Of a DNA stretch of 64,000 nt, positions 4,872-39,100 are shown one piece after another. This DNA comes from Trichosphaerium sp. ATCC 40318 (lineage: Eukaryota; Protista; Tubulinea), in contig JALMLS010000507.1 in NCBI GenBank assembly GCA_038496445.1, positions 434,001 through 498,000 on the forward strand, in the 5' to 3' direction. The notes beneath the pieces are model-generated. The model had not been told where the DNA came from, did not search any database, and worked only from the letters and a program-made list of their open reading frames with translations. The translations under genes and the position numbers were made by a program. Within the stretch, counting starts at the first letter, position 1, and each line of letters begins with the position of its first letter.

Positions 4872-7506
4872 ATGGATAATACTGAAGAAGTAGTTATCAG
4901 TGTAACAAGTTGCGTTTGCACTTTTTGTTATTTTACTGATTGTTCGCAGATATACGCGGAGAGGATTTTGTGAGCTCTAGGGATCCGTTGGGTAATATTT
5001 AAAGTAACACCGGCGTATTTTTATAGTGTACAGGCGAAATTAGTGGTTCATTCTGTTCTGTTAAGCTTCATGATGTATCAGGATCCAAGTCACACTCTAA
5101 ACGGACCAAAATAATAAGAAAGACAAATTCACCGAGGTGGAGACAAGTCTTAACATTGTACGTGCACAAATAATGCAACAAACGCGAAAGCAAACTCTAA
5201 CCAACCTTTTTATTTAGCACAACTAAAAAACAGCCAAAAAACCTGGAGATTTCCATTTGGGAAAGGCACGACACCACACAAATACAGAAGGATCGTATAG
5301 GAATAGTTTACGTTGAGTACGAAACAATATAAAACAGTTTGATGGTTGTATTTGGTCTAAAACAGTAACATAGTCTTACAAACCTGGAAAAGGGTAAAAC
5401 GTTAGAGTGCTCAGAGGATATGGTCTTAAAAGAGACAAAGACAGGTCTATATTTAACGCTTTGTTAAAAATATTTACAACTTAAACGTTTCTTTCCACAA
5501 TAGGCATTTTACATGTAAACGTTGATTATATGACACCACAAGCTATTGGAGAGCAAAAAGAGTTTTTAAGGTTACAATCAAAAATGTTACAAGATGTTGA
5601 TGTCAATGAAGATGATATAATTGAAGGTAAGAATGTGACACCTTATTACTCGAAACGAACGAATTTTCTTTTTTTTCGACATTGTCATCGTTTGAAATTT
5701 CTTCAAGAGTTGCTGACGGAATGCGCGCCTTTTTGGCGTGCCCGCATTCACTTGTAATATTTTTTTAAGCATGTCATCGTTCATTTCTTCATGAGACTTA
5801 TTGACAGATGCTTTTTTTTTGGCTTTTTTTGACACATTTCAAAAAACTCATTGTGACATTTTCTAAAGCAACTCTTTTATTTTAGAGTTTAAAAGCAAAT
5901 ACAATTGGGAACATGGTGATACATACGGATGGTTATTTATTTCAGAAGAAAAAGCTATATTTTATCAAGTTCTGGATAAGATAGGGCACGGAGAGGTATA
6001 ATACTATTTTCTTTATGAATACAATTATTTTTAATTAATATCTCACTGGTTCGGCTTTAGATTCTCGAAATGAAGACTATTACAGATGTGGAGGAAGTAA
6101 ACAATGGGTTACGCATTATAGTAAACTTCACACAGACGGTACGTACAATCTTGAAATAGGAAAGAGGCTTTTCCAACGTTAGCTCTGTTGTTGATTTTTT
6201 GCGTAGCATTGGTTTCCTGAGGTTCAAGATGCTGGTTCTGCTTATGATCTTATAAAACAATACATGCCTGTTGTAAAGACACCATTTTCCCTTAAAAAGA
6301 GGATGTCCGAGGTTTGTTTATAAACATACAATGGTTTTTTTTTTAAGAAACACTTGAAAGTAATTGTTTTTGCTTAGATTAAAAATTCGAATTCTGTGCC
6401 TATACCTAAGGTTATACGTGCAAAGTCAATAGACGCAGCAAGAGCAGTTACAAAGAGTGAGAGTTTACCTGAAGATAGACGACGCAGGAAAGGTAACTAC
6501 CTCTTTGAGCAACTCTTTAAATCGTTGAAATGGTCCTCCAACTTCTTTTGTTTTCAACGTTAACCAACATCCTGCCCAACAATTTTTTGTGTTTCTGAAT
6601 ACTTACTTGTTTGGTGCACTCATAAGCGTGTATAAATCATTTTTGGGCCATAGCGACAATAAACAAACTCACAAATCAAGCGTTAACTTAATGTCGTTTT
6701 ATTATAGGTTTTTTGGGTTCTATGAAAATGAAAAAGAAGTCATACCAATCTACGTCAATGACTGAGATTACAACTGAATCTACATCCTCTAAATCTTCAA
6801 ACAACTCGTTTTCTAAATCAAGTGAGCTATTAAAACCAAAAATACCAAAACAACCATCAAAAGAGCAACTTGGGGCACTTAGTAGGTAAGCACTATCATT
6901 AGGCTGTTTGTGATCAAGATGACTAACTATTTATAGGCGAAGAAAAGGGTTTACTGTCGCAGATGTTCTTCATGCAAGAAAGAAATCTAAAGTTACTTTT
7001 AATCATAGTGAGATATTATATGGTCACTTTGGAAGTCCCATGTTTAAGCAGTTACTTTATGCTTTTTTGAGCTGTATGGTATTTGCTTATGGTTCTTGGT
7101 TGGGTCTTATAATAGCTGCTATTATATTGACTATTGCTAATATAGTATTCAAGAGCTGGGTGTACTACTTTAGCTTCGAGATAGGGAAGAAAATACTAGA
7201 AAAGTTAAATGTAAAGTATGATGTTGGGACAAGATTGATTCCTCTCGCTATTGTACCAGCAGTTATATATCCGTCTTTTAATGGAGCTATAATAGTATTA
7301 CTAGCAGCTACAATGGATTACTTTTCAGTACGTTTGAGGGAGAAAGGGATTGTTTTATTCATTACAAGTCATCCGCCAATTAACTGCTTTCTTCTTAGAT
7401 AATGGGAACTATGCATTTGTTATATCAATCTTGTTTTTTGGCATTTATCTCGAGCTTTTTTGTTGGTCCCACAGCTGAGGATATTGTAGCTCCTTTCAAC
7501 TTGTAA
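4872..7506 (+). CDS. C2 + GRAM/PH-like + multi-pass TM protein
   Basis: KRTKIIRKTNSPRWRQVF (C2), GWLFISEEKAIFY (GRAM-like), hydrophobic C-terminal exons at 7040-7506. Start is tentative. Confidence 0.55.
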
Positions 7507-26714: not shown

Positions 26715-27728
26715 ATGAAGAAAAGCCATTCCAAGCAGAAATGTCCAATTCCATTAAATAAACCGCAATCGCTCTCTGATGACGTATCTAATCTCTCAGC
26801 AACGCAACTAGACCAAGTCAACCATTTGCGATTGCCTCTGGGCGAATCAACTGATGAACTGGATGCAACACAGATAGACTGTTTAGCTACGCCAAAACCG
26901 AGCTTATTACTACAATCTGGAACACAAATGGACTTTTTAACGCAGAGTGATGGTTTGCTTGGTGGAGCTACTCAACTAGACTTTATTACGACTCAAATAG
27001 ACAGCCTAAACGAGTCTGGTGCTGTATTGGGCGCGACACAGTTGGATGTGGCTGGCGCAACTCAAATAGACCTTAAACTATCAGCAACACAGCTTGACGT
27101 GTCTACAGACACGCCAGGGATGATGGCAACACAATTAGATGTCCAGGATTCAGATAACGTGGCAACAAAGTTAACGCAGCCAGATTCGGACTCAGAAGAA
27201 GTAACTGTTGTCAATACACTCGGTAGACTTGTTTCTTTACAACCTGACATAGATGACATCATCCTGGAGCAAGTTTCGCGTGAGCTGGTAGTAGGCAGAA
27301 GCCGTACTGCTGATATCACTCTTTCCATACCACAAATTAGTGGAAAACATTGTAACATTATTACCAAGATAGCTGATGGTAAAGCAACAGCTTTTATACA
27401 AGATGTAAGCTTTAATGGGACGTATCTGAATGGAAAGAAGATAAATGGATGTATAAAATTAAGGGGTGGAGATGAGATATCTCTTGTTTGTCCTAGAACT
27501 ACAGGTGCAAACCTTCCTTCTGTTGCTTTCCGTTACGAGCGAACATTTCGGCAAAGGTCGGGTCTTGGGCTTAGCAGGGAACTTTCAAACGAGGCAGTGA
27601 AGCCAAAGGCAGCAAAACCAAAGAAAGTGAAGCCCAAGGTAGTGAAGCGCAAAGCAAGTAACACACTTCAGGTTCCTAAAAAGAAGAAGATGAAGATGAC
27701 TAAAAAACAAAAAGAAAACAAAGACTGA
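26715..27728 (+). CDS. TQxD-cluster + FHA domain protein with basic tail, intronless
   Basis: 11 T-Q-x-D motifs; FHA motifs VGR, ISGKHC, SFNGTYLNG. Confidence 0.85.
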   Translation: MKKSHSKQKCPIPLNKPQSLSDDVSNLSATQLDQVNHLRLPLGESTDELDATQIDCLATPKPSLLLQSGTQMDFLTQSDGLLGGATQLDFITTQIDSLNESGAVLGATQLDVAGATQIDLKLSATQLDVSTDTPGMMATQLDVQDSDNVATKLTQPDSDSEEVTVVNTLGRLVSLQPDIDDIILEQVSRELVVGRSRTADITLSIPQISGKHCNIITKIADGKATAFIQDVSFNGTYLNGKKINGCIKLRGGDEISLVCPRTTGANLPSVAFRYERTFRQRSGLGLSRELSNEAVKPKAAKPKKVKPKVVKRKASNTLQVPKKKKMKMTKKQKENKD

Positions 27729-30361: not shown

Positions 30362-30857
30362 ATAACCTCTCAACACTCTGAACTTTAAAAGAATTTTTTT
30401 TGATATGTCTCGGGAACGAGAGCTCAAAACAAAAACAAAAAAATAAAATGTACATAAGTGAAAAAGCAGCGAATGGGTGAGTTCAAACGAACGATAGGGT
30501 CTCACAATTTATGGATAATTCTGCCAATTGTTATGACGCGAGTTCCATTGAATGTTACACTATACAACGGCTCACAATACGCGCCATAATAATCACGTTA
30601 TATGTATAAACGTGCGCTATATAAGTATGAACCAACGAACTCCGTTGTTTTTTGAGAAATAGTGGATCGCGTTCCTGTGGCAAGTTTAGGAAGTTCTTTC
30701 AGCAAGATTAGGTGAAAACGCTTAAACGACATCTGTGATTATAAACACTATGCTTTTCTATTACTAGACCACGCGACAACATCATAAAGTACAATTCGTT
30801 CGAAAAATAAGAGGGTGATTCGAAGGCGTTCAGAAATTCAAGATTTTTTCATAATTT

Positions 30858-33800
30858 TCAAGAACTATTGATAACTCCTGAATACACAAGGAAATCTATC
30901 CACTTATCCACAAAATCAGATCCAAGTTCAACCTGTCTTTTTCCTTGCAGTTTATCAAGTAGCTCACGTGTTTTCGGACTAATCTTTCTTCCTGGTCTTG
31001 AAGGAAACTTAGAACCAGAAAAATATGTGTTCTTCATTGTGAACAATGGGTTGCTCTCAGGAACTTCGTATACCTTGAACAAAAAAAAAATAAGTAAGAT
31101 GACGTCTATGAATACTAACTCCAAACAGACAGCTTTTATTATGAAGCTAGCGTACCTCTTTCTTCCATTCTTTGTAAGGTTCTAATTTTAGCTTGTATCC
31201 TTTTCTCGATATGTAATCAAATAGGTAAGAGCATCCCAAACAGTGAGTGTTATCGAAATTATGCGTTGGTGGCGCGTTAGGCATTTCTTTGCTGTGTTCA
31301 TGATAAGCAATAAGGGAAATTATATCTTTAGCCATTATATCAACTGGAGTAATGGCAAGCTTAATATCACCTTCCGGAGCACTCCCTGAAGCAAAAGCGT
31401 CGTTAAAGTTACAAAAATAGAACCATGTTTATTGTACCCATATTTATGCATCCAGACAAGAACCTGTTATCAAAATCGTTGAGATTAGCGTGTCCTGTAA
31501 CCGTTGCAGATCCAATGAACCCTATAATACAATGAGCATATTTCTTTTGATGTTGATCAAGGCGAAAATCTGTTGCACGTGATTTGCACGTGATTAAGAT
31601 AAAAAGCATTTGCACAAAAAGCTTGATATAAACTGTGCATTTAGTACTGTGTGTACCTGGCCGATATATGAAGGCAGGTATCTTTCTTTTGAAAGCAATA
31701 GCGACTTTTTTCTCGCCTGCGTATTTGCTCAAACTAAGTTATTCTTTTAGTTTTTTGCAATGTCATTAAAAAAAACTGGGTATACTTGTATCCTGATGCA
31801 TCATGTCTAGGTCTATCTTTAGGGTATGAGAATGTACTTTCTACTGGAACCGATCCAAATGGGAAAACAGACATTGTCGAGATGTAGTGGACGCTTTTTG
31901 TAACACCTTCGCATGCTAACTTTAGAATTTCTTGTGTTCCTTCTGCATTCACTTTTCTCATGGCGGAGTAAGGCTACAGATAAAGTCAGTGCACTAAGAT
32001 TTTTGTTGGTAGTACCAGAAAGCTATTTACAACAGCGCCAGCATGGATAATAACATTGACAAGTTTTGAAATCTGATCGTAATCTGAATCGGAGATTGCA
32101 AGCTTGTTTTGATTTAAATCTCCAATAATCTACCCCTTTTGTTAAAGTTTTATGTGGTGCTATAGGTGATTTTACAATCACAATCACTTACTACATGTAT
32201 TTTAAGCTTTTCTTTATCATTTAAATTCATCTTCGCCTCTGATAAGGCCTTAAAAAGACGTTGATCGCCTCAAACAAGATAAGATTGTGCAGATAGTTTT
32301 GTGAGTTTTTACCTTCCTTCTTGTCTTTTGCACGAACAATACAATACACTTCCGTTGCCCAATCTGCTTGTATTAGACCATATAATAAATGTATACCAAG
32401 GAAACCAGTAGCACCCGTGAGCAGTACTAAAGCCAATGAGGGAAAAATACTTGTATCTAGGTTGTACCTATTTTTTTTGCGAAAGGGTCAGTCTTAGTAT
32501 CATTCGTTTGAGAAGGTGTAATGCTCTTTGGAAGACTTAAATCATCTAAGAATAGATCCCACTCGTTCTTTTGACTAATAACAAAGAATTGGTGTTATTC
32601 AATGACACGTGACACTTACGCATCAACAAGAGTTCCAGAAGTTTGTCCTAAATTCGATGCAATATAACTTTGTATACCATCTACATCACGTGAGTTTTTT
32701 TTAAGTTAAGCTTATACCTAGTGTGCCAGTATCTTCGTTGTAAATCACGGAAGGAGGTAGATCTACCTTGTATTCTTCTTTGGCCCATTGCATTATTTTC
32801 AAAGCTGAAAGGGAATCTCCGCCTATCTGAGATATCGAATCGTCTAATGCAAAAAAGTAAGTAGTCCGTTGGTTGTTGGGTGATATACCAGAAGCTATTT
32901 TTGTATCAAATATGTCCTCCAGAGCTTTTTTAAGCTTTTTCTTTGTATCTTCTGGATCATACTTGAACTCAGAGCCAACATCTTTGTACATGAAATCAAT
33001 ATCTTCCTTGTATCGTTTAAAAAGAGCGTGTCTGGCAAACTGTGAATAAAGTAAGAAAAAAGTCGCGTTGTACCTGTTAGGTTTTTGGTTTGTTGTCATC
33101 AGTTTGTTATCAACCTACACTTCGTTAACTATAATTGATGGTATAAAGTATGTACAGAAAAAGGAATAGTCTCGAGTGTCAAACGTGCTGGTACTTCAAA
33201 TGATCGAAGCTTTGTATAGTTAGTTGAATTAATCGCCTTGTTAAAACTGTACCTCATGTCTTGCAGCAATAGCTATCATTTGTTTATGAACTACAGCTTT
33301 GACGCGTGCATCTTTACACATGACTTCCGCCGTTGTTGTATCATCGATAAAGGTACAATCCTGCTTAAGCTCAGGCACTGCAACAAAACAAGTTAGTATG
33401 AAAGTCATTCATGCCATACGCACAGTTAATCACTACTATTGCAACCAAAGATGAATATAAAGGGTTTCCATATATGAATATATCCATAATCGCTGGTGCT
33501 TCTAAGTAGAAGGTCTCCAACCTGCTTGGAGCGACAAATTCTCCTTGTGACAACTTGAACATATTTTTCTTTCTGTCAATAATCCGAATACCATTTACTC
33601 CAACACATTCAACCTACAAGTAGAAACAAATAGTCAGACCAAGGAACTCCAATAAATCGGAAAGTAAGGGAGACTTGCAATATCGCCAGTGTGGAACCAT
33701 CCATCTTCATCGAAATTCGCTTTTTCAGCTTCAGCATTTTTGAAGTATCCAAGAATCATTGAAGGTGTTCTTACACATCTGAAGATACAAGAATTAAATC

Positions 33801-36063
33801 ACGTGTGTTACCAAAACAATGTATTCTTTGCTCTAATATTCACGTACAGCTCTCCTCTTGGTAGAGGTTTATCAGTAGTTTTATATTCCTCCCAGTCAAC
33901 AATCTTTGTTTCCGTTGTTTTATGTGTTACGTTGTCACTAGCAATCTGTCCACACTCAGTTGTACCATAGCTTTCCAAAACAATACTTGATTTAAAACAC
34001 TTTCTCATAAACCTGAGAACCTCTCCACTAGTAGGAGCACCTCCTTGGGATAAAATAAGAACAGGTAAACAAGATACACATACCTGTAACCAAGTATGCG
34101 CAACGTCCTCCAAGAATTTTAGAGAAATTCTTGTTGAATTGTCTTTTCGCTTCTATAAGCTCTGGTTTTGATATGATCCCTTCACAAGCTTTTTCCATTT
34201 GCTGAACATATGCATTATACAACTTGTTCCATAGTGCCTAACATCTCATTAAAAACAATCACAAAGAAAAAATCAAGAAACAACATAGACAGTTTTCAGC
34301 TTTTGGGTTCGTACAGGTGTGCTTGATAGCATGGTAGGTCTCAATGCTTGTATGTCCAGTATAAGACGAGATACTTCTCCTGAGTAAACACCAACACGAC
34401 CACCATTACACAAAGTTATCAGGTTATTCTTCCTGTCGCTGTTGGAAAATGCGAAAATGATAAAAGGATCCAATAATCCTTTTGAAGAAACTACAGTATG
34501 ATTCCAAGCTTTATCACTATGCATCGCTCCTTTAGGCATACCAGTACTTCCAGATGTATCTAATCACGAATAAACAAGATAAGAGATTAGACTACTCATG
34601 TTCTTACATACTAGCGTAAGCATATCATCAGGGTTTGTAGCACGATGATCTGGTTCCCTGTTTTTACCCTTTCGGAAAAAATTAGATGTTGTTAAACTCT
34701 CTTTGTTTTGTTTACGTACACGTTCTATAAGTTCTTTATATGTGATTACCTCACATTTATCGGATATATCAGTGATATCCTTAGGATCTACATCTTCCAT
34801 GATAACCAGCGCTTTTATGAAAGGACATTCTTTGGTCATCAAAGCAAGCTAGAAATTGAAGAAAAAACAATTAGCTTTTTTGCTCATGTTTTTTAGTTGT
34901 TTGCTTGTACTTGTTTGACATTAGTACTATCTGTAAATATCACTTTCATTTCACATTGCTTCGCAATGTACTTAAGTTGATCGGGTTTCAGCGCAACAGG
35001 CATAGGTGGACCAATAATAGAGTTCAACTTTGCAGAAAATCAACATACATTATTGTGTTAGCTTCGTTTAATGTACCAAACATGCAAAATCAGCTATATA
35101 CCAATCAATGCTATTCTTTCCACAAATACCAACAAACTTCCTCTTTTAAACATAAATACAAACGGTTGAGCAAATGAAGACAATGTCCTTGTCATTTGTA
35201 GAAAGAAAATCCAGGAAAAAAAGAAGAACTTACAGGTTCCACGAATGTTCGAAGCCCACGGCCAATACTCTCTGCACGTTTATATACTTCACTAAATGTA
35301 AGCCATTTATAGGGTCCAAGCTTTCCATCTTCACTACTACGACTTCTATAGCCTAAACAAGGTCTATTGCTCCAAGCTTTAAACATGTTCCTAAGGAAAG
35401 TGTTACATTCAAAATAACAAAACAAACCGACGTTAAAGTATGCATGAAAGACGGTCCTCCAATTGTTTCTCTAAGTAATATAGGAGCCCTTCGTTCAATA
35501 TACTATATCATGTCAACATATGTAGGAGTTAAATAGAAAAATATTGATACCATTGGATGATTATGACCTTTTTCTTTGAAGCAAGTTTCACACAAGTCAT
35601 AATCAGCAGCTTCTATTTTGTCTTTTGTCAGTTACTGAGTACAATAATTTGCATGAAAGTGTACCGTAGCTATGGTACCGTGCATCTCCTTCATTAATAT
35701 GGTGTCTACAAATATCACAGCTTCATTTGGTGAATAGGAGGTAAGAATTTGTATATTGTACGTAAAAAGCGCGTCATCGCCTTCGCGCATGCGTAACATC
35801 TGTAAATCCGTTTTGTATGAACCTTCTGTACTCTTTTGTTTGCCTATTGTAGTAATTATCATCGTACATGCTTTTTACACGATACCTAGACGCATAGCGC
35901 CAGTTGGAGTATATTTAATGCCATTTCCGCTTGATATAACATCCATTACGTTTAATTGTAAATTGGGCATTGCAGACGCGTTTGAAGCGCTTTGATCTTG
36001 TTTTTTATCTATCTTTTCATCAGGCTCTATTTCGTTCTTCTCTTTGTTGTTTCTGTTGCCCAT
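30858..36063 (-). CDS. Carboxylic-acid-reductase-like A-T-R enzyme with N-terminal Gly2 and ZZ zinc finger
   Basis: YTSGSTGMPKG, SYGTTE, TDKPLPRGEL, GWFHTGD, KLSQGEFV (A domain); GGDSLSA (PCP); LLTGATGFLG, GYNLSK (R domain); CDIC..DYDLCETC..HNH (ZZ). Confidence 0.9.
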
Positions 36064-36186: not shown

Positions 36187-39100
36187 TCACTTTACATCTT
36201 GTCCTAACTTTGATACATAGTTCTTAATATGCCAAATCAAAGGTGTATTATTAGATGCAACAACATTCCAAAGTATCTGAACATTTGTCTCAACGATATT
36301 AGCAAATTCGTTCAACAAGCAAAACTTGATACAATCCTCTTGAAGTCTTTCTGCGCTGTACTTGTTTGCAAGTTGCCAAAATTGTAAATAGTTATTCTTT
36401 GATATCTCGTTGACAAGGTAATCCTCACAATATTTACCGAGGTCTTCCATATCAAATTTCTCTGCAAGTATCATTACTTCAAGAGCAACATTTGCATTCT
36501 CAAATGTTGTTTTCTTAAGGTATATGAATTCTTTGACTTTAACAAAGTGATCTCTATTGACATCCATAAGTTTCTTTTCTTCTCTAACGGAGCTTATTGT
36601 AGTTTTATCACCTAAATATAATCAAAAAAGTCATGCGAATTTTTAGTTTAAGAGCCCGTTACTGAGAGCTGAAAGTCACAACAAAAAAAAAAGATCAAAA
36701 AACGGTGACAAAATTGAAAAAAAACTCTTGTGGTCGTACCCAGAAACATATCGTCAAAGTGATCTACATCGCAGATAATATATTTATGAGCATATACGGG
36801 ATCACCTGATTCAAATGTAAAGATAATATCAGAAAACTTCTCATCTTGAAAAAGTTCAGCAATATCATCTTTTTCTTCTGTCTTCACTTCTGTCTTCTTC
36901 CATAGAGATACGTTCGAAAACATTGATAATGTCTTAGACATGGAAACAGATGTTTGTTTAATCATCTCCATATTTCCTTCAAGTACACTAACGCGCCTAA
37001 AAAAAGATAAGAACCAACGAACAAAAAAACAACAAAAAAACAAATTTCATTTGGAAGCAAACTATTTTTCCTGTCTTCTTCATTCGTACTTTTCGGCGTT
37101 GTGGTACGCTGTTACTACCCTAACAATAGCTTTTGAAGAATCAATAGCATAATCCTTCTTAGATTCGTTTGCGTTCTGTTTAGGATCATCATTATGAGCT
37201 GCATATATTACAGTAAATAGAGCTGATACAACAGGCTGTAGGTGTTTTTGTAGGTGTACTAGAAGAATAAATAAGTATCAATTACCTGAACGAGCAGTAA
37301 CAAAACATTGATTTGTTCTTACTTTTATGTATTGGATAAGTGAGTTCGATGGCACAATGGAAACCAACGTTATTTTCTTTGTAAGATAGGCAAGGAACCA
37401 AAAAAGGTGTAACAGCAGCCAAGACTTTACCAGACGCAGCGCTTAGTTTTTTATGCTTAGCATTACGTAAGGTAGGAAGATTACCAGATAAAATTATCGG
37501 AAGAACAAGACCAGACAGAGAAGTACCTAATAAAGAAAAGTTGATGAGATTTTGTTAAAGATGCGTGACGCACTTGTTGCTAACATCATTGCGATTGCTG
37601 TTGCTGCAGGATTAGCAATACCTTCATCCTCTTTGTTGGTAAGAAAAAAGAGAGCTTCCAGAATACCCATATGCACAAAGAAAGGAATATTTGATTCTGG
37701 GAGGCACATGCATTCAACTAATACACAAAGGTTGTTAATAGCATGCATACTTGTAATTTCACCACTCATTACACTCTTGAATAGTACAGATATCATTGGA
37801 ACTAAACAAACAAGACATTAACATACGTAGTAACTAATAATAAACGTACGTGCACCTGCACTGACAATTGCTTCACGACAAGAATCTAAATAAAAGTATT
37901 AATACCTCTTCAAAACACGTGAAAGATTTCGAGGTTTTTTAATTATCACGCGATAAGCTATTTTTTTTGGTTTTTGTTTTACTTACTGTGTTTCATTGCC
38001 ATAAGGGCAATACCAGTTGTTGCTAGCATCAAACAAGCTTGATGCGTTTTATTCAGGTTTTTAACATATCTCATTATCACTTCTTTCTGGTTACTGATTT
38101 CGCGCTCGTAGCCTTTCCAAAAAAGGATGTATCAGTACCAACGATTGTTAAGCAAATTGGTCTAAGTGCAAGTAGCATTTACGTACGACTGATTTGAAGA
38201 AATCTATTCAAGCAACGCATGACACCTGCTTCTAGCATAGCGTCATCAACTGACCGTGAAAACATCTTCAACAAGCATGGTAGTATTTGCAAGTCATATA
38301 CACGAGTAACTACAGCATCTACAAATACTTATAAGACAAGGAAACTCGAGGAAAACATGGCCTTGGAAAGTTTGACAAAAAACCAACAACTTGCTGTCTC
38401 ACTCCATTGACACGTGTCATTGTCTTTGTTCATCAATATACGATAAAACAGAGCAAGGATACAAACTTTTGGATATGAAGAAAAAAAACGTACCATCTTG
38501 TAACGCATATCCAAGAACGTGGGTTGCCACTTTAAGCAATTCAGTGCTTTCACCATTGATAATCATTTCTGTTATCTTATCAACAACACCTTGCTCTATT
38601 AACACCTGTCTACCGATTTCTAAAAGAAGAAATAAAAGTTAAAAAAGAGCAATCTTTTTAAAGCAATTACTGTACCTGTTTTGGCTAAGTTAGCCAAAAT
38701 ATGCAACACGAGTATTTTAGCGCTTAGTGTTACGGAAGAACGAGTCGTTTGAAGGAAATCAAGTAAATGAGGAACAAGACTGTTGCATTCTACTAGATAC
38801 TTCACTAGGCAGTGTGTTAATAGTGCTATACGCGTAATACAGCGATTTAAAGCAATATTAATGACTTGGAAGAGAAAAACAATTGTGTAACGTCATACCA
38901 AGTTTAGGGGTTTCTGAAAATTGTTTAAGTGTTATCAATGACGTTTTAACGATCTGTGTGTTCTCGTGTTGAAGTAGAGAAACAAGAAGATTAACGTATT
39001 TGAGAGAAAATACAATCTGCTGAATACCAGCGTCTTTAGCAGTAATTGTCAGTAAAATACCCAAAGCTTGGAGTACATGATCTCTACGAAAACAGAAATT

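What the first reader, a model, noticed from the sequence alone, without database searches (positions are those of the whole stretch)
30858..36063. Myristoylated, ZZ-finger-bearing carboxylic acid reductase-like enzyme
Seen: MGNRNNK (Gly2), then a ZZ finger (about 35553-35721: CDIC..RYHSYEAADYDLCETCF..HNH), spliced in frame to A-PCP-R domains. The motifs (TDKPLPRGEL, KLSQGEFV, GGDSLSA, VLLTGATGFLG) resemble actinobacterial CARs. The ZZ has lost its second CxxC but keeps the CD/DYD aspartates that bind N-terminal Arg degrons in p62-type ZZ domains. Inference: a membrane-anchored acid-to-aldehyde reductase regulated or targeted through N-terminus recognition. It is fully intronised, so long resident.
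Basis: partly seen in the sequence, partly recalled or inferred. Interest (0 to 1): 0.72.

Follow-up and report, generated by a model that had tools for sequence, protein, structure and literature searches.

The report
ZZ-finger carboxylic acid reductase gene
This is an intact, intron-rich amoeba-type gene for an enzyme that should turn carboxylic (probably fatty) acids into aldehydes; it belongs to an unstudied, eukaryote-wide family that carries a small ZZ zinc finger in front of the enzyme, and here the finger has lost one of its two zinc sites.

Summary
On the minus strand, 36063 to 30858, lies a gene of about 25 exons with no stop in frame. It encodes Met-Gly-Asn..., a ZZ finger split over two exons, then AMP-binding, PP-binding and NAD_binding_4 domains. 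All core catalytic motifs are present. The adenylation exon hits only bacterial carboxylic acid reductases (CARs) in the PDB.

A spliced RNA contig confirms the last three introns and transcription of the 3' end. No RNA covers the ZZ exons. The ZZ-to-enzyme fusion is supported independently: the same ZZ-A-PCP-R order occurs in transcripts and gene models of Clastostelium, Ceratiomyxa, Pelomyxa, Polysphondylium, Ancoracysta, Platysulcus and a bdelloid rotifer, and ZZ-A in partial records of Balamuthia and Amoeba proteus. The Clastostelium protein aligns colinearly across the ZZ/linker/A junction.

The second Cys pair of the ZZ is replaced by Ser and Ala. Balamuthia, two metagenomic relatives and two paralogues in this genome have also lost one or both of these cysteines.

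Myristoylation and N-terminus (N-degron) reading are untested. Gly2 is not conserved in the family, and the p62 Asn132 position is Arg here. I found no paper on this fusion. Verdict: a new variant of a known kind, moderately interesting.

The parts
30858..36063 (-). Whole coding span of the ZZ-A-PCP-R gene, ATG to stop, about 25 exons
   Evidence: A stop-free GT-AG exon chain. Domains found exon by exon. Colinear tblastn match of the Clastostelium protein P0001.
35879..36063 (-). Exon 1: MGNRNNK..., 61 codons plus 2 bases, rich in Lys/Glu/Asn, Gly at position 2
   Evidence: The frame is open for 89 codons. Codon-usage log-likelihood is +20 bits in frame and -24 bits in each other frame. The phase-2 donor GT|GTAAAA fits the acceptor of exon 2. 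No RNA evidence.
35665..35720 (-). Exon 2: ZZ N half, CDIC...RYHSY, with the first CxxC; Ser stands where the third Cys should be
   Evidence: alignment A1.
35551..35612 (-). Exon 3: ZZ C half, (E)AADYDLCETCFKEKGHNHPM, with the third CxxC and HxH; Ala stands where the fourth Cys should be
   Evidence: Pfam ZZ 25.8 bits, cut-off 21.4. PF00569 search of the window's own genome hits C10:469551-469610, which is window 35551-35610.
35234..35470 (-). Exon 4: ZZ-A linker and start of the adenylation domain (WSNRPCLGYRS at 35374-35342)
   Evidence: The phase-0 junction HPM|RNNW has an 80-nt intron. The region is colinear with P0001 residues 60-122.
33073..35470 (-). Adenylation (ANL) domain. P-loop TSGSTGMPKG 34557-34528; SYGTTE 33972-33955; PLPRGE 33867-33850; DGWFHTGD 33705-33682; IIDRKKNMFKLSQGEFV 33583-33533; A10 Lys in TTNQKPNR 33096-33073
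   Evidence: Pfam AMP-binding on several exons. In the PDB the exon hits only CARs: 6oz1, 5msp, 5mso, 5msc. Motif coordinates.
32719..32900 (-). Carrier (PCP) domain; phosphopantetheine Ser in GGDSLSA at 32823-32803
   Evidence: Pfam PP-binding 30.7 bits, cut-off 20.8.
30861..32424 (-). Thioester reductase domain. Rossmann LLTGATGFLG 32424-32395. Catalytic Tyr in DASGY 31802-31788 and Lys in LSKYAGEK 31732-31709, giving Y-x3-K across a 52-nt intron
   Evidence: Pfam NAD_binding_4 on four exons.
31522..31656 (-). Intron of 135 nt, confirmed by RNA
   Evidence: Spliced contig of run X1, 100% identity, GT..AG on the minus strand.
31386..31437 (-). Intron of 52 nt, confirmed by RNA
31074..31155 (-). 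Intron of 82 nt, confirmed by RNA
30823..30857 (-). 3' untranslated region, at least this far
   Evidence: The RNA contig runs on to 30823.

Best explanation
This is an intact, transcribed gene for a CAR/FadD9-type carboxylic acid reductase. It belongs to an old eukaryotic family in which a ZZ zinc finger sits directly in front of the enzyme.

Inferred mechanism, from the conserved motifs:
1. The ANL adenylation domain activates a carboxylic acid with ATP. The substrate is most likely a medium- or long-chain fatty acid, because the DGWFHTGD...IIDRKK...KLSQGEFV stretch matches the fatty-acyl-CoA-synthetase signature.
2. The acyl group is passed to the phosphopantetheine arm on the Ser of GGDSLSA.
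3. The SDR-type reductase domain (TGxxGxxG, Y-x3-K) reduces the thioester with NAD(P)H and releases the aldehyde.

The ZZ is an accessory module that binds a protein or ligand. In this gene it keeps the first zinc site (CDIC plus CETC), the HxH pair and the acidic groove residues (D after Cys1, R of RYH, DYD). It has lost the two Cys of the second zinc site, so it probably holds one zinc.

Shown: the gene structure, the domains and motifs, conservation of the fusion in other eukaryotes, 3' splicing, and a phosphopantetheinyl transferase family match (Pfam ACPS) in the genome.

Inferred: the chemistry, the substrate class, the role of the ZZ, and a possible N-myristoyl anchor on Gly2.
For: Domains found exon by exon: ZZ, AMP-binding, PP-binding, NAD_binding_4. 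The A-domain exon hits only CARs in the PDB. A full stop-free GT-AG chain runs from ATG to stop, with three introns seen in spliced RNA.

The ZZ-A-PCP-R order recurs in P0001 (Clastostelium transcript), P0029 and P0020. ZZ-bearing members come from Pelomyxa, Ceratiomyxa, Balamuthia, Polysphondylium, Amoeba proteus, Ancoracysta, Platysulcus and Philodina. P0001 aligns colinearly over the ZZ C half, the linker and the A domain.

A full-length search with P0001 ranks actinobacterial CARs (27-28% identity over 85-90% of the query) above acyl-CoA synthetases. The CAR-like set is one clade against ACSL (99-100% support).

The Pfam ACPS (phosphopantetheinyl transferase) family matches two loci in the genome.

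An AF2 model of the Balamuthia ZZ, which also lacks these two Cys, has pLDDT 86-92 in the core. It matches p62 and p300 ZZ structures at 1.1-2.4 A rmsd and 31-40% identity.
Against: - No RNA covers exon 1, the ZZ exons or their junction to the A domain. The one run found covers only 590 nt at the 3' end.
- No member of the ZZ-CAR family has been assayed, as far as the paper library shows.
- One exon junction (GDIA/NGIRIID) gives a loop of 27 or 36 residues, against 30-34 in relatives.
- The loss of two zinc ligands could mean the finger no longer folds. The AF2 model was made on a proxy protein with an alignment of mostly intact ZZs, so it is weak evidence.
- The substrate is not determined.
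Confidence: 0.7

Rival explanations
1. The enzyme is N-myristoylated on Gly2 and so anchored to a membrane. Its ZZ works like the p62 ZZ as a reader of free protein N-termini (Arg N-degrons) that targets or regulates aldehyde production.
For: MGNRNNK fits the N-myristoylation pattern G-{EDRKHPFYW}-x(2)-[STAGCN]-{P} (read from the sequence; the pattern is from my knowledge of PROSITE PS00008). Exon 1 looks coding. The equivalents of p62 D129, R139, D147 and D149 are present (residue roles from PMC6197226). The best structural matches of the Balamuthia-type ZZ model are p62 ZZ-peptide complexes.
Against: Gly2 is seen in only one other ZZ-bearing relative (P0029) and not in paralogue L019. The p62 Asn132 position, which holds the Arg side chain, is Arg here. 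DYDLC is the general ZZ consensus. By sequence the full ZZ of P0001 is nearest to CBP/p300 and S. pombe Nbr1, not p62. The second zinc site is gone. No binding data exist.
Confidence: 0.15
2. In this lineage the ZZ is a decaying remnant with no function of its own. The enzyme works as a plain CAR and the finger is merely tolerated.
For: All three ZZ-CAR paralogues in this genome have a damaged second zinc site: the window gene has S and A, L013 has C and R, L019 has T and D. L019 falls below the Pfam cut-off (19.3 against 21.4 bits). Many family members appear to have no ZZ at all.
Against: The four first-site Cys, the HxH pair, the R of RYH and the D/DYD acidic residues are all kept. The same Cys-to-Ser variant is kept in distant relatives (Balamuthia P0044, P0054, P0083). 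Codon usage in the ZZ exons is coding-like. Free decay would not spare these positions.
Confidence: 0.15
3. The gene model is wrong at the 5' end. Exon 1 and/or the ZZ exons belong to a separate small transcript, or to another first exon, and are not joined to the A domain.
For: There is no RNA over 35500-36063. An alternative short first exon (ATG at 35869, 15 codons, phase-2 donor at 35822) also fits the ZZ acceptor. An ORF-maximising model finds another stop-free path that skips CDIC. If the intron after HNHPM were retained, a stop follows 15 codons later.
Against: The two ZZ halves and the linker join in phase with GT-AG sites and reproduce the family's spacing residue for residue. The fusion is present in real transcripts of other species (P0001, P0006, P0014, P0053, P0112). 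The ZZ N half opens directly at an acceptor after a stop, so it needs an upstream exon.
Confidence: 0.07
4. The protein is not a free-acid-to-aldehyde reductase. It could reduce twice to give the alcohol, or act on an amino acid or other special acid as the fungal NRPS-like reductases do (Lys2, glycine betaine reductase).
For: A-PCP-R enzymes differ widely in substrate and in the number of reductions (bioRxiv 10.1101/559534, listed; otherwise general knowledge). This genome holds at least eight A-PCP-R loci, which suggests diversified roles.
Against: The A domain is of the ACSL/FadD9 type, not the NRPS amino-acid type: PDB hits are CARs only and the family groups with CARs next to ACSL. There is only one R domain.
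Confidence: 0.15

Closest known systems
Bacterial carboxylic acid reductases (Nocardia/Segniliparus CAR, mycobacterial FadD9; EC 1.2.1.30; PDB 5msp, 5mso, 6oz1)
   Same: Same A-PCP-R order and the same motifs: P-loop, KLSQGEFV, A10 Lys, GGDSLSA, TGxxGxxG, Y-x3-K. They are the only PDB hits of the A exon. They rank next after the closest, mostly eukaryotic or unassigned, hits in a full-length search with P0001.
   Different: About 28% identity. Bacterial CARs form their own clade (100% support) and have no ZZ. This gene has about 24 introns and an N-terminal extension of about 130 residues.
Uncharacterised eukaryotic ZZ-A-PCP-R proteins, for example Pelomyxa schiedti KAH3745124, Polysphondylium violaceum KAF2072257, Philodina roseola AEN94433, and Clastostelium and Ceratiomyxa transcripts
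   Same: Same four-domain order, with the ZZ 30-40 residues ahead of the conserved PCLGYR start of the A domain.
   Different: At most about 32-37% identity to the window gene. Most keep all eight zinc ligands, whereas the window gene has six. Databases label them only automatically, as 'FadD9', 'long-chain acyl-CoA synthetase' or 'carrier domain protein'.
ZZ domains of p62/SQSTM1, CBP/p300 and Nbr1 (readers of N-termini and ligands)
   Same: Cross-brace ZZ pattern. Asp after Cys1, Arg of RY, and D-Y-D before Cys5 are all present. The AF2 model of the Balamuthia variant overlays p62 and p300 ZZ.
   Different: The second Cys pair is lost. The p62 Asn132 position is Arg. The finger is attached to a metabolic enzyme rather than to an autophagy or chromatin protein.
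Long-chain acyl-CoA synthetases (ACSL/FACS)
   Same: The A domain shares the FACS signature DGW.HTGD...IIDRKK...KL.QGE.
   Different: ACSLs match only the A-domain half of the query (about 50% coverage, Pfam AMP-binding only). They form the outgroup clade.
Fungal NRPS-like reductases (Lys2 alpha-aminoadipate reductase, ATRR glycine betaine reductase)
   Same: A-T-R logic and a need for a PPTase.
   Different: Their A domains are of the NRPS amino-acid type. NRPS A-T-R proteins match more weakly than CARs in the search and sit on a long branch.

Membership tests
Carboxylic acid reductase (CAR/FadD9-type A-PCP-R) | ANL adenylation domain with P-loop, A5, A7, A8 and the A10 lysine | tested here: met
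   Pfam AMP-binding on exons. Motifs located: TSGSTGMPKG, SYGTTE, DGWFHTGD, KLSQGEFV, QKPNR. The A exon hits only CARs in the PDB.
Carboxylic acid reductase (CAR/FadD9-type A-PCP-R) | Carrier domain with a Ser for phosphopantetheine in a GGxS motif | tested here: met
   PP-binding 30.7 bits, above the 20.8 cut-off. GGDSLSA at 32823-32803.
Carboxylic acid reductase (CAR/FadD9-type A-PCP-R) | C-terminal SDR thioester reductase with TGxxGxxG and catalytic Tyr/Lys | tested here: met
   NAD_binding_4 on four exons. LLTGATGFLG is present, and SGY|NLSK gives Y-x3-K.
Carboxylic acid reductase (CAR/FadD9-type A-PCP-R) | Groups with known CARs rather than with ACSL or NRPS in a tree | tested here: inconclusive
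   The CAR-like set, including this family, is one clade against ACSL (99-100% support). Within it, bacterial CARs are a separate clade and the deeper order is unresolved. The window was placed only through three single exons.
Carboxylic acid reductase (CAR/FadD9-type A-PCP-R) | ATP- and NADPH-dependent reduction of an acid to an aldehyde | not testable with these tools
   Needs an enzyme assay.
Carboxylic acid reductase (CAR/FadD9-type A-PCP-R) | A phosphopantetheinyl transferase available in the same genome | tested here: met
   PF01648 matches over the cut-off at C238 and C173.
ZZ-type zinc finger (PF00569) | Match to the family profile above the curated cut-off | tested here: met
   The C-half exon alone scores 25.8 bits against 21.4. 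The N half aligns with family members but has no Pfam hit of its own.
ZZ-type zinc finger (PF00569) | Eight zinc ligands: C-x2-C, C-x2-C, C-x2-C, H-x(1-3)-H, binding two zinc ions | tested here: not met
   Six of the eight are present. The second pair is Ser and Ala. The window gene is therefore a ZZ-derived, probably one-zinc, variant.
p62-type N-degron-reading ZZ | D129, N132, R139, D147 and D149 equivalents lining the groove (PMC6197226) | tested here: inconclusive
   The D, R and D-Y-D equivalents are present, but the N132 position is Arg. Peptide binding was not testable.
N-myristoylated proteins | Gly2 in a context accepted by N-myristoyltransferase, at the true N-terminus | tested here: inconclusive
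   MGNRNNK fits the pattern, and exon 1 is coding-like. The start codon has no RNA support, and Gly2 is not conserved in the family.

The most novel reading that the evidence does not exclude
The ZZ-CAR family couples recognition of a free amino terminus to aldehyde formation. The ligand could be a partner protein, a peptide or an amino-acid-like molecule, held in the conserved acidic groove of the ZZ. The ZZ would either gate the enzyme or bring it to its site of action. The recurrent variant without the second Cys pair would be a previously unrecognised minimal one-zinc ZZ fold that keeps this groove.
Probability: 0.12. Interest if true: 0.75.

Novelty: new variant of a known kind. Interest (0 to 1): 0.45.

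Why it matters
CARs are valued biocatalysts and are treated as bacterial and fungal enzymes. Here a third, eukaryote-wide branch appears. It is found in Amoebozoa, Naegleria, a stramenopile, Ancoracysta, Picozoa, a sponge and a bdelloid rotifer, and many of these carry a ZZ finger. In public databases it is labelled 'FadD9' or 'acyl-CoA synthetase'.

The ZZ domain is known as a reader of protein N-termini in autophagy and chromatin proteins. In all solved structures retrieved here it sits in autophagy, chromatin or ubiquitin-ligase proteins, so a fusion to a metabolic reductase appears unusual. It suggests regulated or localised aldehyde production in protists.

The repeated loss of the second zinc site, with the first site and the acidic groove kept, is a natural experiment on what a ZZ needs in order to work. 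The family has a member in a dictyostelid (Polysphondylium), a group with established genetic tools, so the question can be tested.

Tried and rejected
- RNA support for the 5' exons. One run was found with 9% of the words.
- An ORF-maximising exon-chaining script. It proved that a stop-free path exists, but it kept the 135-nt intron that RNA shows spliced, skipped the CDIC exon, and chose a wrong donor at exon 8. I corrected these by homology.
- The joined (spliced) protein was not assembled for, or sent to, any search, fold or tree tool. All searches went exon by exon by reference. In the trees the window is represented only by three separate exons, so its placement is coarse.
- The window's own ZZ could not be folded because it is split over two exons. 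The Balamuthia ZZ (P0044:48-108) served as proxy.
- Paper searches for ZZ plus CAR or thioester reductase, and for FadD9 in protists or rotifers, found nothing relevant (one search failed on a short term).
- The scan's earlier findings, searched by words, gave nothing.
- Deep phylogeny. Neither FastTree nor quick IQ-TREE resolves whether bacterial CARs are sister to, or nested in, the eukaryotic forms. I draw no conclusion on the direction of transfer.
- A gene cluster. The neighbours are a BTB gene and an FHA gene, with no metabolic partner.
- An MAFFT --auto run timed out.


Full report
**What is in the sequence**

The region 30858-36063 holds a split gene on the minus strand. Translating the open pieces exon by exon against Pfam gives, in order:
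- the C half of a ZZ finger (25.8 bits, cut-off 21.4);
- several AMP-binding pieces;
- PP-binding (30.7 bits);
- four NAD_binding_4 pieces.

The ATG of MGNRNNK is at 36063 and the stop codon at 30858-30860. A script that chains GT..AG introns found a stop-free path from ATG to stop with about 25 exons and introns of 40-158 nt.

**Gene model and RNA**

One public run holds part of the locus. Its 590-nt contig lies at 100% identity on 30823-31681. It skips three stretches bounded by GT..AG on the minus strand: 31522-31656, 31386-31437 and 31074-31155. So the gene is transcribed and spliced at its 3' end. These three introns also corrected my automatic model, which had read through the 135-nt one.

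Nothing covers the 5' third. There the model rests on sequence logic:
- Exon 1 (36063-35879) ends in phase 2 at GT|GTAAAA.
- Exon 2 (35720-35665) begins right after a stop at an AG and reads CDIC...RYHSY.
- A 52-nt intron with a GTAC donor, the donor form of all three RNA-proven introns, leads to exon 3 (35612-35551), which reads (E)AADYDLCETCFKEKGHNHPM.
- An 80-nt intron in phase 0 leads to exon 4, which starts the A domain.

Exon 1 is open for 89 codons in AT-rich DNA. Its codon-usage score is +20 bits in frame, against -24 bits in each other frame. That is the same per-codon level as the proven exons, while the introns score negative.

Two uncertainties remain. A 15-codon alternative first exon (ATG at 35869) also fits the acceptor of exon 2 and cannot be excluded. 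One internal junction (GDIA / NGIRIID, near 33600-33680) has only two canonical solutions, giving 27 or 36 residues where relatives have 30-34.

Everything was done exon by exon.

**Is the ZZ really part of the enzyme?**

Independent evidence says yes. A HMMER search of 1.8 billion representatives with one A-domain exon returned full-length proteins of 1200-1400 residues. Pfam finds ZZ, AMP-binding, NAD_binding_4 and, in two of the three, PP-binding in P0001, P0029 and P0020.

A ZZ profile built locally from these hits marks 28 records among those fetched at that point. The named ones are:
- Amoebozoa: Clastostelium, Ceratiomyxa, Pelomyxa, Balamuthia, Polysphondylium, Amoeba proteus;
- others: Ancoracysta, Platysulcus and the bdelloid rotifer Philodina.

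Several of these are assembled transcripts, so the fusion exists in mRNA elsewhere. The Clastostelium protein aligns to the window colinearly through the ZZ C half, the linker and the PCLGYR start of the A domain.

The window's gene has no close orthologue in the databases. The best is P0023 at about 32% identity.

**Family relations**

The A exon hits only CARs in the PDB. A full-length search with P0001 lists closer, mostly eukaryotic or unassigned, relatives first. Actinobacterial CARs follow at 27-28% identity over most of the length, and acyl-CoA synthetases come after, covering only the A half.

In FastTree and quick IQ-TREE trees of the A domain rooted on ACSL:
- the CAR-like set is one clade (99-100% support);
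- bacterial CARs are one clade inside it (100% support);
- the eukaryotic and ZZ-bearing sequences form an unresolved grade.

The window's three test exons fall next to Balamuthia, Clastostelium/Ceratiomyxa and the metagenomic P0054 and P0073. This fits the earlier notes of this scan that call the genome amoeba-type. It also fits vertical descent within a eukaryotic family. I draw no conclusion on who gave the gene to whom.

**The ZZ finger**

Against the family (A1) the window keeps the first CxxC (CDIC), the third CxxC (CETC) and HxH (HNH). It has Ser and Ala at the second CxxC, with the spacing exactly preserved.

The same loss, with Ser at the third-Cys position, occurs in Balamuthia P0044, P0054 and P0083. 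P0054 pairs with the intact P0086 at 99% support, so the loss probably happened more than once.

The window's genome holds at least two more ZZ-CAR paralogues, and both have a damaged second site:
- L013 on contig C30 has Cys and Arg at the second pair; Pfam ZZ scores 30.8 bits.
- L019 on contig C111 has Thr and Asp there and is encoded in one exon; Pfam ZZ scores 19.3 bits.

These paralogues are no closer to the window gene than database relatives are, so they are old.

All four variants with Ser at the third-Cys position keep Asp after the first Cys and an acidic-x-Asp (Asp-Tyr/Phe-Asp in three of the four) before the fifth Cys. In p62 these are D129, D147 and D149, which cage the alpha-amino group of the bound N-terminus, together with R139 (PMC6197226). 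The window has the R139 equivalent too, but it has Arg at the place of Asn132, which in p62 holds the Arg side chain.

Two further points limit the p62 comparison. DYDLC is the general ZZ consensus. By sequence the full ZZ of P0001 is nearest to CBP/p300 and S. pombe Nbr1, and only then to p62.

An AF2 model of the Balamuthia variant is confident in the core (pLDDT 86-92). It overlays p62 and p300 ZZ structures at 1.1-2.4 A rmsd and 31-40% identity. It was built on an alignment of mostly intact fingers, so it does not prove that a one-zinc finger is stable.

**Mechanism**

The enzyme core has every residue class that CAR chemistry needs:
- P-loop, A5, A7, hinge/A8 and the A10 Lys in the A domain;
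- Ser in GGDSLSA in the carrier domain;
- TGxxGxxG and Y-x3-K in the R domain.

The Pfam ACPS (phosphopantetheinyl transferase) family matches two loci in the genome. I therefore read the gene as an ATP- and NAD(P)H-dependent acid-to-aldehyde reductase. The near-perfect fatty-acyl-CoA-synthetase signature (DGWFHTGD...IIDRKK...KLSQGEFV; my knowledge of that motif) points to fatty acids. This is inference only.

The ZZ is most simply a docking module. A role as an N-terminus reader is possible but untested, and specificity for Arg is unlikely. Gly2 fits the myristoylation pattern but is not a family feature.

**Novelty**

Three full-text searches found no paper that links a ZZ finger with a CAR or thioester reductase, or that discusses these protist or rotifer 'FadD9' proteins. 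The family is visible in databases under automatic names. The enzyme kind is known. The conserved ZZ fusion and its one-zinc variant are, as far as I can see, undescribed.

Noticed in passing
G000 contigs C30 (L013 about 6380-6800, minus) and C111 (L019 4480-4890, minus): Two further ZZ-CAR paralogues sit in the same genome, both with a damaged second zinc site. L013 has Cys and Arg at the second pair and an intron 4 codons upstream of the window's. L019 has Thr and Asp there, and its ZZ lies in a single exon.
   Followed up: partly
L019:4850-4890 (minus) and P0001 residues 1-12: The paralogue starts MVLRTSNFFGVS, much like the Clastostelium protein's MVKRVVHFFGLS. This is a conserved N-terminal motif ahead of the ZZ, and the window gene lacks it.
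   Followed up: no
G000 loci L011, L012, L014, L015, L016 (contigs C32, C50, C1, C80, C19): At least five more A-PCP-R (CAR-like) loci without a detectable ZZ lie in this 70-Mb genome. C80 and C19 look like a recent pair. This is a sizeable expansion of acid-reductase-like genes.
   Followed up: partly
window 36187-37043 (minus): The upstream neighbour on the same strand is a BTB/POZ gene (Pfam 23.9 bits). Its stop lies only 126 nt before the ATG of the reductase gene, so the spacing is very tight.
   Followed up: partly
window 26715-27728 (plus): An intron-free ORF of 337 codons carries an FHA domain (Pfam 48.2 bits) after a repeat-rich 'ATQLD/ATQID' N-terminal half.
   Followed up: no
P0074 cluster (JGI, 1503-1744 aa), P0083 (1910 aa), P0102, P0155/P0156: Some relatives carry long N-terminal extensions ahead of the ZZ. 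One is annotated 'small GTP-binding protein', so the ZZ-CAR unit is itself fused to other modules in some lineages.
   Followed up: no
window 31074-31656 and 35613-35664: All three RNA-proven introns and several predicted ones begin GTAC, an unusual preferred donor for this genome.
   Followed up: no
trees: With an ACSL root, the bacterial CAR clade sits inside the eukaryotic grade rather than outside it. Support is too weak to read a direction of transfer.
   Followed up: partly
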